34,768 nt of DNA from NCBI RefSeq assembly GCF_001194135.2, contig NC_069005.1, forward strand, positions 28,686,479 through 28,721,246. Direction: 5' to 3'. The notes beneath the pieces were generated by a model. It was not told where the DNA came from and did no database searches. It was given only the letters and a program-made list of their open reading frames with translations. A program made the position numbers and the translations under genes. Origin of the DNA: Octopus bimaculoides (Eukaryota). Positions 6,983 through 9,900 of the stretch are shown one piece after another. Each line of letters opens with the position of its first letter. Position 1 is the first letter of the stretch.

Positions 6983-9900
6983 GTAAGTAAATTCTAAATC
7001 TTCTCCTCCTCATAACTGTACATTTTATATAGAATTCTATTTTAACCCCTTTGATACCAATATTTGTAAGAGAACCCTTCTATTTTAACCCTTTCTTTAC
7101 CATATTTTTGCTGAAATCTATTCCCTTTGTTTCAATTAATTTTTGAAATAATTAGAATTTAGTAAAATAACTTTGTGATTATTAAGCTGCTGCTTGGAAC
7201 TTCAATTAACAAGAAATTTTGATGGAAGATTTTTATTTAAAACAGGATGTCTGTGCCCTAGGCCTAGGGATGGTCTCAAATGGGTTGGTAACAATAGGGT
7301 TGATGTGATTTAAATTGAAACCTTCCACCTAAACTTCATGTTAACTGACGTTTCAAACACCAGCTTAATAACGAGTTATTTTATCGGTTTCTTCTTTAAT
7401 TTTCAAAATTAGTTGAGAGAAGGGTAGTAGCTTTCAACAGAAGTTTGATAACAAAAGGTTTCATCCTTTCTATAGCAACCTGAAATTTCTCCTCGTTCTA
7501 CAATTCGAAATTGTTTCCTTTATGGCAGTGGTTCCTAAAGTGGGCTGTATTGCCTCCACCCCCTAAAAATGTTTGGGGATCACTGCTTTACAGTGTTTAT
7601 ATTTAAATTAAAACTTTCCATTGTAATTTTATATAAGAACCATTTTTTTTCTTACGTTCCAAAATACTAGCTTAATAACAGAGTATTCTATCTTATTTAA
7701 TCCATCCTCCCATCCAACCAAATTCTTCATTATTTAAAAAAAATGAAAAAAAAAAAGAAAAGAAAAAGAATTAAAACATTTGGATAGTATCTTTCATTAA
7801 TAAAACCACCTCAGAAGGGTTAAATGGGATTATTTTTGTAGGAAATGTTTCTGTTCTTCATTTTGTGCAAAATATTTGTCATTTTTATTTTAATGGTGTG
7901 TGTGTGTGTGTGTAAAATGACTCTGATGCAGTTGCTGTTTATATAAGTAGCACTTCCCGCCGTCTCTCTTCTATTCACCTTATGTTAGCTGTAATATTCT
8001 CAAACAAAATGATTCGCTGGGTTGTGCCCCAGCTCTTTGGTCTGTAGGTATTCTGCCTCTCCATCTGTTGATGTTTCACTGGCCAACATCAAACCTCAGT
8101 TTCACGTATCTCGGAAATTTGTCTGAACTATACTTGGAAAACGCCACAGAGGAAAGAAGAATGTTCTCATGAAAATAACTTTGAAACCTGGTTTGGTTTC
8201 AATGTTGGCATGGAGTTTTCCATCACTACATTCCATCCTCTGGTCCACAAATGTGCTCTGTTCTCATTGCCTCCACCAAAGACAACAATGATGACCATCA
8301 CCATCACTACTATAGCGCCCTCTCTTCAGAGTTGGCTGGTCTCATACCATTCCACTCAGGCTCACTTGTCCGTCTTCCCTTTTCGACTGTATTGTGTCTA
8401 ACCCCACCTCACCCCCTGCTCTAACCATTCGACCCGTTCCTTCCACCGTCTGAAAATTCCTCCCTATCCATATTTCTATTTGTGTCCTGCATGTTGTTTA
8501 AAAGTAGCATAGCATCAACTTATTAACCTCAGAAGTTAATAAGTTGGAGGATGCGTGATGATCATGGGCCCACAGCTCCTTTCTTCAGACAAAAAAAAAA
8601 CAGAATGAAATAAAAAAATAAAAAATTTAAGTTTTCAAAAAATGATTATAAGAATTGAGAAATTTTGAGAGAACATGAAGTAATCCTTTTTCAGAACCGT
8701 GAAACTTGAAACAGATAAAACTTTCAAATAATAGTATGCAAATATAGTGTTTAAAAGAAAAAAAAACAAACCTTATATAGAAAAGTTTAAAGGCTGCCAG
8801 TGGAACTTGAACTCACATCTGTAATCATAACAATTTTTCTTTCATTTCTGGTACCAAAGGTTCTGAAGAATCAGTGTTGTACCTGTATAATATAAGTGGC
8901 TGAGTATTCCACAGATATGTGGAGGTGTGTGGTTTAGTGGTCAGGGTTTTGGCTCACAATCGTAAGGTCGTGGGTTTGATCCCTGGTGGCCCATTGTATC
9001 CTTGAGCAAAACACTCGTTTCACATTGCTCCAGTCCAGTCCACTCCAGTCAGCTGGTAGAAGTGAGTTGTACATACAATTCAAAGGGTCAGCCTTTTTAC
9101 ATTCTATGTCATGCTAAATCCCCCCCTCTCGAGAACCGAGTTAAGGATACGTGTGTCAGTGGAGTGCTCAGCCACTTGCACATTAATTTCACGAGCAGGT
9201 TGTTCCTTTGATCCAATTGAATGAAACCCTCATTGTGCCAGGAAGCCAAATTGGTGTCACACATTGAGACAAGGCTGGTCTTTGAAATTGGAGGTACATT
9301 ACATCCAATAAGCTTTGATACACTTTCCATCTACCCAGTGCCGTTCACAAGACCCTCGATTAGGCCAAAGTTAGAGTAAAGACACTTGTTCAAGATCTCA
9401 CACATTAGGATCAAAGCCAAGGCTGCCCCATTATCATTTTTAAATTCCAGGTTCGTATGCTGTGTGTGCTTGTCTAGGAAGTGTCCATTCAAAATCTTTC
9501 ATGTTTGCTGAGTTTTTTTTTTCTTGTTCTTTCTTTTATTTTTTATTATCATTAGTATTATTATTATTTGCGGGGGAGAACTTTCTTATTAACTCTTGAA
9601 CTGTTATGATTAGACTGCAGTGGAGAAAATGGATTCTGGTAAGCATCCTTCCGAAGAGAGCACCATGCCATTAGAAGCTAAACGCCCTCGCAACTCTGAG
9701 AATGTGGAGCCGACATCACCAACTTCTGAAAAGAAAGCAGAGGTAAAATTTAATCAAGTCTGGGACCATTAACACCTGCTTCTTAACGATCTCTTTCAGC
9801 CACTTGCTTAATTTCTTAACTTGTTTATTCCCACCATTTTTCCCTTGTCATCTATAAACTTGTTTTTTTTTTCTTTTTTTTTCAGTATATATTTTTCATT

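What the first reader, a model, noticed from the sequence alone, without database searches (positions are those of the whole stretch)
9614..9742. Hidden phase-0 exon in ASL intron 1 could add an NLS-bearing N-terminus (possible nuclear ASL isoform)
Seen in sequence: within the 5-kb first coding intron there is a non-repeat, protein-like ORF, ATG(9629)[38 protein letters not shown], closed by GAG|gtaaaa at 9742/9743. Its phase 0 matches the AGKLWGGRF exon at 12060. The start context aaaATGg is strong. Two acceptors precede it. With cag|9621 it has 8 nt of UTR before the ATG, mirroring the 11-nt UTR of the MSEE exon, so the two could be mutually exclusive start exons. With tag|9614 it is a 129-nt symmetric cassette giving [14 protein letters not shown]...KAE-AGKLW. 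Established knowledge: K-R-x-R/K is the monopartite importin-alpha NLS pattern, T-S-P is a proline-directed kinase site type, and ASL is classically cytosolic and releases fumarate and arginine. Inference: a short cytosolic isoform and a long nuclear-targeted isoform, providing local arginine or fumarate. A competing model is an 18-nt microexon, 9621-9638 (cag|WRKWIL|gtaagc), which is also in frame.
Basis: partly seen in the sequence, partly recalled or inferred. Interest (0 to 1): 0.75.

Follow-up and report, generated by a model that had tools for sequence, protein, structure and literature searches.

The report
Octopus ASL exon with NLS-like tail
The "hidden" exon is a real, always-included and already annotated coding exon of the octopus argininosuccinate lyase gene; it adds a floppy N-terminal tail carrying a conserved KRPR motif that looks like a nuclear import signal, and related cephalopods splice the matching segment in or out.

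Summary
Window 9614-9742 is a 129-nt, phase-0 exon (tag|ACTGCA...GCAGAG|gtaaaa). RNA shows it is real. In 2 raw-read runs and 10 contig runs from 6 further studies it is joined 6982->9614 and 9742->12060. No skipped form, no use of cag|9621 and no 18-nt microexon was seen.

It is not hidden. The 505-aa protein rebuilt from the window is exactly XP_014778296.1, argininosuccinate lyase of Octopus bimaculoides. So in this species there is one long isoform, not a short/long pair.

The exon is a separate exon with the same splice sites in O. sinensis and Argonauta hians. The block EAKRPRNSE is invariant, while the rest of the peptide is about 56% identical.

Two unnamed cephalopod-like transcriptomes carry long and short ASL mRNAs. 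They differ only by a clean 75-nt (…PKRPRY…) or 51-nt (…KNKQAR…) in-frame segment at the same slot.

AlphaFold gives residues 1-54 as disordered. Nuclear import through KRPR is plausible (about 0.45) but untested. Rivals are a PEST-like regulatory tail or a neutral extension.

Interest is moderate.

The parts
6960..6982 (+). 23-nt ASL exon holding the annotated start codon (ATG 6971, MSEE), phase 0, donor gtaagt. RNA shows a further upstream exon (…CCGACCG) spliced onto it, and that exon lies outside the window.
   Evidence: (overhang CCGACCG|AAACTTCTAACATGTCTGAAGAA)
6983..9613 (+). Intron between the MSEE exon and the examined exon. It ends with a T-rich tract and the acceptor ttag|.
9614..9742 (+). 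The examined exon: 129 nt, symmetric (phase 0/0). It encodes [43 protein letters not shown], residues 5-47 of ASL, and is included in every run examined.
   Evidence: RNA junctions; exact match to XP_014778296.1; 97.7% identical to O. sinensis against about 87% for the flanking introns
9629..9631 (+). In the observed mRNA it is internal Met10.
9680..9691 (+). Codons AAA CGC CCT CGC = K27-R28-P29-R30, the NLS-like basic motif. It sits in the invariant block EAKRPRNSE.
9743..12059 (+). Intron after the exon. The donor is gtaaaa and the acceptor tttcag.
12060..12167 (+). Next ASL exon ([36 protein letters not shown]), where the conserved catalytic core begins.
6971..23600 (+). Whole annotated ASL coding region: 17 coding exons, 505 aa.

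Best explanation
Shown: window 9614-9742 is coding exon 2 of the Octopus bimaculoides argininosuccinate lyase (ASL) gene. It is included in every run examined and is already part of the public gene model. It is spliced 6982->9614 and 9742->12060. It inserts 43 residues between an ancestral-looking start (MSEE) and the conserved core (AGKLWGGRF).

Shown: the resulting N-terminal tail of about 47-57 aa is acidic, rich in Ser/Thr/Pro and predicted to be disordered. It contains one basic cluster, KRPR.

Shown: the exon, its splice sites and the block EAKRPRNSE are conserved across octopods. Two other cephalopod-like species have a shorter segment at the same slot (75 nt with PKRPRY, 51 nt with KNKQAR) that is spliced in or out.

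Inferred: KRPR acts as a classical monopartite nuclear localisation signal. Exposed on a flexible tail on each subunit of the roughly 230-kDa ASL tetramer, it would be bound by importin-alpha and carry part of the enzyme into the nucleus, where ASL makes arginine and fumarate locally. In species X and Y the dose would be set by splicing. In Octopus the signal is hard-wired, and any regulation would have to act on the protein, for example by phosphorylation of the flanking Ser/Thr-rich tracts.

Confidence is about 0.99 that this is a real, constitutive, annotated exon. It is about 0.45 for the NLS mechanism, and that is the figure given.
For: Exon reality and constitutive use:
- depth lies only on 9614-9742, with overhangs into exon 1 and exon 3.
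- in each of 9 contig runs laid on exon 3 (X1, X3-X7, X9, X11, X18), a single contig covers exon 3 and carries …GAAAAGAAAGCAG(AG) of exon 2 upstream. In one search the X1 and X12 contigs laid on exon 2 read on into exon 3.
- raw-read depth at 12058-12059 equals that at 12060. A read joining exon 1 (…GAA) to exon 3 would start at 12060. This bounds skipping at no more than 1 of about 129 reads in X23 and 0 of 58 in X24.
- Exon 2 depth is at least exon 3 depth in both raw-read runs.

Annotation: exact 505-aa match to XP_014778296.1 / A0A0L8GSV5.

Conservation:
- O. sinensis and O. vulgaris differ by one residue.
- Argonauta hians has a separate exon with attag| and GAG|gtaaa.
- the exon is 126/129 identical to O. 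sinensis while the introns are about 87% identical. Argonauta introns cannot be aligned.
- 24/43 identity outside the invariant blocks.

Alternative splicing elsewhere. Transcripts are identical apart from clean 75-nt and 51-nt segments, found in neighbouring run accessions.

Disorder: pLDDT below 50 and no secondary structure for residues 1-54, while the core is above 90.

Motif and biology:
- KRPR fits K-K/R-x-K/R.
- KRPRP is the constitutive NLS of adenovirus E1a (PMC2289585).
- Mammalian ASL is found in nuclei and, with ASS1, makes fumarate there, without any known NLS (PMC11272581, PMC12864887).
- Non-cephalopod ASLs have short N-termini without the motif.
Against: - No localisation data exist for any cephalopod ASL.
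- K[KR]x[KR] arises in 8% of composition-matched shuffles of the peptide, so the motif alone is weak evidence.
- The tail has net charge -4 to -11 in octopods, and only one basic cluster is conserved.
- Species Y has KNKQAR rather than KRPR, so the motif is not universal.
- Homology between the octopod exon and the X/Y segments rests on position, phase and a short similarity (xAExG…KRPR). It is not statistically supported.
- Species X and Y are unnamed. Their cephalopod identity is inferred from 73-74% identity and shared derived motifs.
- Octopus shows no isoform choice, so a simple cytosolic/nuclear switch by splicing does not apply in this window's species.
Confidence: 0.45

Rival explanations
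1. The tail has a function, but not nuclear import. It would be a PEST-like or phospho-regulated disordered segment that controls ASL turnover or its docking to partners such as ASS1 or NOS-type complexes. KRPR would merely be the basic boundary between two PEST tracts.
For: Two tracts flanked by K/R/H and free of internal basic residues sit on either side of KRPR: [13 protein letters not shown] and [15 protein letters not shown]. They score +16 to +31 with a PEST-FIND formula I re-implemented from memory, where the threshold is +5. The same holds in O. sinensis and Argonauta. The tail is disordered and 34-38% Ser/Thr/Pro.
Against: The PEST-like tracts are absent from the shorter species X and Y segments, and their sequence drifts between Octopus and Argonauta. 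The element that stays fixed is the basic core. The PEST score is compositional and has a high false-positive rate. It does not exclude an NLS as well.
Confidence: 0.2
2. The exon is a lineage-specific exonisation that now encodes a tolerated disordered N-terminal extension with no specific role. KRPR is retained by shared descent and weak constraint.
For: No homologue of the peptide exists outside cephalopods (searches found nothing; searches show short N-termini elsewhere). The tail evolves much faster than the core, about 56% against 89% identity between Octopus and Argonauta. The motif arises by chance in 8% of shuffles. ASL N-termini are variable in length across animals.
Against: The exon is much better conserved than its flanking introns. 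Against O. sinensis there are 3 differences in 129 nt, 2 of them synonymous, compared with about 87% intron identity. Frame, phase and both splice sites are kept in Argonauta, where the introns cannot be aligned. The 9-residue block EAKRPRNSE is invariant inside a drifting peptide. KRPR recurs in species X within an otherwise different segment. Regulated inclusion and skipping in X and Y suggests the segment matters.
Confidence: 0.25
3. One reading: (a) an alternative start exon entered at cag|9621 and translated from ATG 9629, mutually exclusive with the MSEE exon; (b) an 18-nt microexon 9621-9638; or (c) a regulated cassette that yields a short cytosolic ASL in O. bimaculoides.
For: The splice-like sites exist in the sequence, and aaaATGg is a good start context. 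Only a limited set of tissues and stages was sampled, and contig data drop rare variants.
Against: Contig overhangs before 9614 are exon-1 sequence, and depth reaches 9614 at nearly full height. There is no drop or joint at 9638. No contig joins exon 1 to exon 3 in the 9 contig runs laid on exon 3, and there is no depth step at 12060 in the raw reads. The 462-aa and 496-aa products are absent from the protein collection.
Confidence: 0.03

Closest known systems
Nuclear ASL/ASS1 in mammals (Nat Metab 2024, PMC11272581; review PMC12864887)
   Same: It is the same enzyme. The nuclear pool makes fumarate with ASS1 and affects chromatin (SMARCC1 succination) after DNA damage. This gives a concrete role for a nuclear ASL.
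   Different: Mammalian ASL and ASS1 have no recognisable NLS. ASS1 entry depends on importin-7 and is damage-induced. The cephalopod protein carries a genetically encoded classical-type basic motif on a dedicated exon. Its nuclear localisation is unproven.
Adenovirus E1a C-terminal NLS KRPRP (PMC2289585)
   Same: It shares the K-R-P-R core. In E1a this short basic stretch is a constitutive NLS.
   Different: E1a has KRPRP at the extreme C-terminus. Octopus has AKRPRNS inside an acidic N-terminal tail, and species X has PKRPRYG. Function in one context does not prove function in another.
NLS-bearing alternatively spliced cassettes in enzymes, for example the CaMKII delta-B nuclear isoform (from my own knowledge, not checked here)
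   Same: A short in-frame cassette carrying a K-K/R-x-K/R motif is included or skipped to set nuclear versus cytosolic localisation. This matches what the long and short mRNAs of species X and Y look like.
   Different: In O. bimaculoides the exon is constitutive. No localisation data exist for any cephalopod ASL.
Canonical animal ASL N-terminus (human [13 protein letters not shown]; other molluscs)
   Same: Without the exon the octopus protein would read [13 protein letters not shown], close to the ancestral form. The catalytic core is typical ASL (PF00206 + PF14698, 63-69% identity to other animals).
   Different: The octopod protein has 43-47 extra residues, plus about 10 more from an upstream exon. 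These are inserted before the core and are absent outside cephalopods.

Membership tests
Argininosuccinate lyase (fumarase/aspartase superfamily) | Lyase_1 (PF00206) and ASL_C2 (PF14698) domains, and high full-length identity to known ASLs | tested here: met
   Precomputed Pfam hits for the exact protein. It is 63-69% identical to molluscan and vertebrate ASLs over 90% of its length. The AF2 model of the core has pLDDT above 90.
Argininosuccinate lyase (fumarase/aspartase superfamily) | Conserved signature loop GSSxMPxKxN and the HTGRSRNDQ region | tested here: met
   [15 protein letters not shown] and [11 protein letters not shown] are present in the rebuilt protein and invariant in the 49-sequence alignment.
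Bona fide internal coding exon | AG/GT boundaries, an open frame in phase with its neighbours, and spliced reads on both sides | tested here: met
Alternatively spliced cassette exon | Both inclusion and skipping mRNAs in the same species | tested here: not met
   For O. bimaculoides only inclusion was seen, in 10 contig runs and 2 raw-read runs. The feature is met in species X (75 nt) and species Y (51 nt).
Alternatively spliced cassette exon | Length a multiple of three, so that skipping keeps the frame | tested here: met
   129 nt, and 75 nt and 51 nt in species X and Y.
Classical monopartite NLS (importin-alpha dependent) | Core K-K/R-x-K/R | tested here: met
   KRPR at residues 27-30. The chance rate is 8% in shuffles, so this is weak evidence on its own.
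Classical monopartite NLS (importin-alpha dependent) | Located in an exposed, flexible region | tested here: met
   AF2 gives pLDDT 30-41 and no secondary structure for residues 1-54.
Classical monopartite NLS (importin-alpha dependent) | Motif conserved among orthologues while its surroundings drift | tested here: inconclusive
   KRPR is invariant in three Octopus species, Argonauta and species X. Species Y has KNKQAR. Homology of the X/Y segments to the octopod exon is inferred.
Classical monopartite NLS (importin-alpha dependent) | Necessary and sufficient for nuclear import, and binds importin-alpha | not testable with these tools
   This needs fusion-protein localisation and binding assays.
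PEST degradation motif | A tract of at least 12 aa rich in P/E/D/S/T, flanked by K/R/H, with no internal basic residue and a PEST-FIND score above 5 | tested here: met
   Two tracts score +16 and +23 in O. bimaculoides. Scores are similar in O. sinensis and Argonauta, and there is no such tract in species X or Y. The formula was re-implemented from memory.
PEST degradation motif | Confers rapid or regulated turnover | not testable with these tools
   This needs half-life measurements.

The most novel reading that the evidence does not exclude
Coleoid cephalopods have an old, dedicated N-terminal cassette in ASL that encodes a classical NLS. It is spliced in or out in squid- or cuttlefish-like species and fixed as constitutive, and enlarged with phospho/PEST-like tracts, in octopods. 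These animals would then hard-wire a nuclear pool of a urea-cycle enzyme for local fumarate and arginine production. Mammals achieve the same only conditionally and without an NLS.
Probability: 0.3. Interest if true: 0.6.

Novelty: new member of a known kind. Interest (0 to 1): 0.4.

Why it matters
The exon is already in the public O. bimaculoides gene model, so as a sequence feature it adds nothing.

Three things appear to be undescribed:
- Cephalopod ASL carries a lineage-specific disordered N-terminal tail.
- Its only strictly conserved element is a KRPR motif identical to a proven viral NLS core.
- The matching segment is alternatively spliced in other cephalopod-like species.

Nuclear ASL/ASS1 was recently shown in mammals, where how ASL enters the nucleus is unknown. 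A natural ASL with an encoded import signal would be a clean comparative case and a ready-made tool, namely long against short isoforms, for asking what nuclear arginine and fumarate production does.

If the motif is not an NLS, the finding is just an ordinary annotated exon encoding a variable tail.

Tried and rejected
I used short stretches and overhangs instead.
- Overhangs 'before' an exon are not printed for raw-read runs. I therefore bounded skipping from the depth step at 12059/12060 and from contigs.
- Laying contigs on the 23-nt MSEE exon to read the upstream exon failed, because nothing that short is laid.
- The peptide alone found nothing in the word-indexed protein search or in the exhaustive search of 50% representatives. 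One search also missed the protein's own database entry, so that negative result is not informative.
- The first protein search returned only short ASL fragments with no extension.
- The upstream exon (…CCGACCG|gt) was sought in the window and in 10 kb upstream of the ATG and was not found. It lies further upstream.
- A bipartite NLS (KR…15 aa…KK) was considered and rejected, because the second basic pair is not kept in Argonauta.
- A mitochondrial presequence was rejected because the tail is strongly acidic.
- A furin-type cleavage site was rejected because KRPR does not fit R-x-K/R-R.
- For the exon-10/11 junction I tried three splice choices. Only the donor 16706|gtacgt keeps the frame, and it matches the public protein exactly.
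Full report
**1. The observation**

- The 23-nt exon 6960-6982 contains ATG 6971 (MSEE) and is followed by gtaagt.
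- At 9611-9613 a tag acceptor precedes ACTGCAG, and a second AG ends at 9620.
- ATG lies at 9629. The frame stays open to GAG|gtaaaa at 9742/9743.
- The next exon starts at tttcag|GCTGGAAAACTCTGGGGTGG (12060, AGKLWGGRF).

**2. It is a real exon, and which model is used**

Many RNA runs hold about half of the sampled 31-mers of 9560-9800, which is the share the exon occupies.

Two raw-read RNA runs and two contig runs were laid on 9570-9860.
- Depth of roughly 130-190 lies exactly on 9614-9742 and is zero in the flanks.
- The overhang behind 9742 is CTGGAAAACTCTGGGGTGG, the 12060 exon. It was seen in 110 and 83 reads.
- The overhang before 9614 in contigs is CCGACCG-AAACTTCTAACATGTCTGAAGAA. This is the 6960-6982 exon preceded by a further upstream exon.

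- Depth is already near full height in 9614-9619, and contigs begin their match at 9614. The cag|9621 acceptor is therefore not the main one.
- Depth is flat across 9638/9639 and no joint is reported there. The 18-nt microexon has no support.

**3. Constitutive, not alternative, in this species**

Nine contig-assembled runs from five further studies were laid on exon 3 (X1, X3, X4, X5, X6, X7, X9, X11, X18).
- Each has exactly one contig over exon 3.
- Each of these contigs carries …CAACTTCTGAAAAGAAAGCAG(AG) of exon 2 upstream.
- No contig joins exon 1 to exon 3.

A tenth contig run, X12, was laid on exon 2 only. Its contig runs from exon 1 through exon 2 into exon 3.

In the raw reads the alignment always starts at 12058, because exon 2 ends in …AG like the intron. 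A read joining exon 1 (…GAA) to exon 3 would start at 12060.
- Depth at 12058-12059 equals depth at 12060-12061, to within 1 of about 129 reads in X23 and 0 of 58 in X24.
- Exon 2 depth is not lower than exon 3 depth in either run.
- Skipping is therefore at or below about 1% in those libraries.

Contigs can miss rare forms, and the tissues are unknown to me. A tissue- or stage-restricted short form is not excluded.

**4. It is already annotated**

I rebuilt the whole coding region from the window: 17 exons, 6971-23600, 505 aa. This exact sequence is XP_014778296.1 / UniProt A0A0L8GSV5, 'argininosuccinate lyase [Octopus bimaculoides]'. The locus is CM046625.1 of GCA_001194135.2.

The exon-skipped product (462 aa) and the product starting at ATG 9629 (496 aa) are not in the collection. 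The exon is therefore not hidden. The '5-kb intron' is two introns of 2631 and 2317 nt.

**5. Conservation**
- *O. sinensis and O. vulgaris.* XP_029650909.1 and the O. vulgaris model carry the same peptide with one change, N34T.
- *DNA level against O. sinensis.* The exon differs at 3 of 129 positions, two of them synonymous. The flanking introns are about 87% identical.
- *Argonauta hians.* The ASL model (519 aa, 89% identical in the core) has the orthologous segment as a separate exon. It keeps attag| and GAG|gtaaa, while its introns cannot be aligned.
- *Peptide identity.* The peptides are 24/43 identical, but GKHPS and EAKRPRNSE are invariant.
- *Outside cephalopods.* Other molluscs, annelids, cnidarians and vertebrates have 5-25 residues before KLWGGRF and no such motif. 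Without the exon the octopus protein would begin [13 protein letters not shown], close to human [13 protein letters not shown] (the human sequence is from memory and was used only to map exons).

**6. The splice-regulated version exists elsewhere**

The closest non-octopod relatives are unnamed transcriptome assemblies. They are 73-74% identical to the octopods, which is higher than any other mollusc. They share derived motifs with the octopods, such as GAIAGHPF and [12 protein letters not shown]. I infer they are other cephalopods, probably decapodiforms, but could not name them.

*Species X*
- The 488-aa form reads MATG-HAEIGPRNPKRPRYGQTQMGDLSRE-KETKLWGGRF. It is found in SRR21372856, SRR21372858 and SRR30931879, 80, 83 and 84.
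- The 463-aa form reads MATG-KETKLWGGRF. It is found in SRR21372857.
- The two forms are otherwise identical.

*Species Y*
- The 481-aa form reads MSAAQ-LAESGPTKNKQARCSKE-METKLWGGRF (SRR27666069).
- The 464-aa form is found in SRR27666064 and SRR27666068.

At nucleotide level each pair is identical except for a clean 75-nt or 51-nt in-frame segment at the same slot. That is the signature of alternative splicing, most simply a cassette exon. No genome was available to confirm this. The segments resemble each other (xAExGPxxxKxxR). Species X shares KRPR with the octopods.

**7. What the tail looks like**
- Residues 1-47 contain 11 acidic and 7 basic residues and 16 Ser/Thr/Pro, with few hydrophobic residues.
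- AlphaFold2 with a 49-sequence alignment gives pLDDT 30-41 and no secondary structure for residues 1-54. The core is confidently folded, with mean pLDDT 82.5.
- KRPR (9680-9691) is the only basic cluster conserved across octopods.
- Two PEST-like tracts flank it, scoring +16 and +23 with my own re-implementation of PEST-FIND. They are kept in composition in O. sinensis and Argonauta and are absent from species X and Y.

**8. Mechanism**

*Best reading, inferred, about 0.45.* KRPR is a classical monopartite NLS presented on a flexible tail of each subunit of the tetramer. At about 4 x 57 kDa the tetramer is too large to diffuse through nuclear pores. Support comes from four points:
- KRPR fits K-K/R-x-K/R.
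- KRPRP is a documented constitutive NLS in adenovirus E1a (PMC2289585).
- The motif is the fixed point of an otherwise drifting peptide.
- Nuclear ASL has a known job in mammals. With ASS1 it makes fumarate that modifies SMARCC1 after DNA damage, although neither enzyme has an NLS there (PMC11272581; PMC12864887 lists ASL as 'NLS: No').

*Against this reading:*
- There are no localisation data.
- The chance rate of the motif is 8%.
- The surroundings are acidic.
- Species Y has KNKQAR.
- Homology between the octopod exon and the X/Y segments is only positional.

*Rivals:*
- A PEST or phospho-regulatory tail (0.2).
- A tolerated neutral extension (0.25).

**9. Comparison with what is known, and novelty**

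As a sequence feature the exon is already known from the RefSeq and UniProt models. I found no paper on cephalopod ASL N-termini in the searchable library. The NLS-like motif, its conservation and the alternative splicing in other species therefore seem undescribed.

It would be a new member of a familiar kind: a short NLS-bearing segment, constitutive or alternatively spliced, that redirects an enzyme.

**10. Verdict**
The exon is real, the cassette geometry is correct and KRPR is conserved. It is not hidden and not alternative in this species, and nuclear targeting is unproven.
- Interest is moderate (0.4). The comparative pattern gives a testable handle on nuclear ASL, but everything functional is inference.

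Noticed in passing
Upstream of window 6960 (outside the window); L005 ~10001-10019; L003 10001-10019: RNA contigs of O. bimaculoides carry …CCGACCG spliced onto 6960, and the frame stays open ([10 protein letters not shown]). O. sinensis and Argonauta models start 10 codons earlier (MSEEPTETAN, MSDEPTEVLT) in an exon ending CCGACCG|gt. No such exon lies in the window or within 10 kb upstream of the ATG. XP_014778296.1 is therefore probably short by about 10 N-terminal codons, and ATG 6971 may be the second Met.
   Followed up: partly
window 6971-6982; L005 ~10001-10012: The 12-nt start ATGTCTGAAGAA (MSEE) occurs in the 6960-6982 exon here and also in the upstream first exon of O. sinensis (ATGTCTGACGAG and ATGTCTGAGGAG in Argonauta). 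This suggests an old duplication of the start mini-exon in octopods.
   Followed up: partly
window 12167 -> 13277: Three reads in X23, against 106 for the normal junction, join exon 3 directly to exon 5. They skip the 87-nt in-frame exon 4 (13013-13099, GSVAYAK…GLHK). This is probably splicing noise.
   Followed up: no
window 16685-16712: Three GT donors stand close together at the end of ASL exon 10: GTAAGT at 16685, GTAAGT at 16703 and GTACGT at 16707. Only the weakest-looking one, 16706|gtacgt, keeps the frame (…DRDFVIEF…) and reproduces the public protein.
   Followed up: yes
window 28850-29986 (-): An intronless 378-codon ORF encodes a tandem array of C2H2 zinc fingers. The public annotation calls a 345-aa gene here, at L004 31414-33016, with no Pfam hit on record.
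   Followed up: no
P0040 (O. vulgaris CAI9740801.1): This model lacks the 36 residues of the AGKLWGGRF…DLQ exon, part of the conserved core, but keeps the KRPR exon. It is most likely a gene-model error.
   Followed up: no
window ~10014-10107: A short interspersed repeat lies about 270 nt downstream of the exon and has more than 20 copies in the O. sinensis ASL locus. The exon itself is single-copy.
   Followed up: no
window ~740-1340, ~4060-4320, ~33420-33830: Runs of N (assembly gaps) lie inside the window. A 67-nt tandem repeat (2.4 copies) lies at 2822-2981.
   Followed up: no
L012 vs L008, 5' ends: The long and short species X transcripts also differ upstream of AGAAACCTAAAC. The short contig's upstream sequence looks like the 3' end of an intron (…ttttgttttgttacataaataatttag), so it may be partly unspliced rather than a different first exon.
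   Followed up: no
P0101 (Strongylocentrotus purpuratus ASL isoform X1, 612 aa): This sea-urchin ASL model carries an extra FLYWCH-type zinc-finger domain (PF04500). It is another case of a long non-canonical extension on ASL.
   Followed up: no
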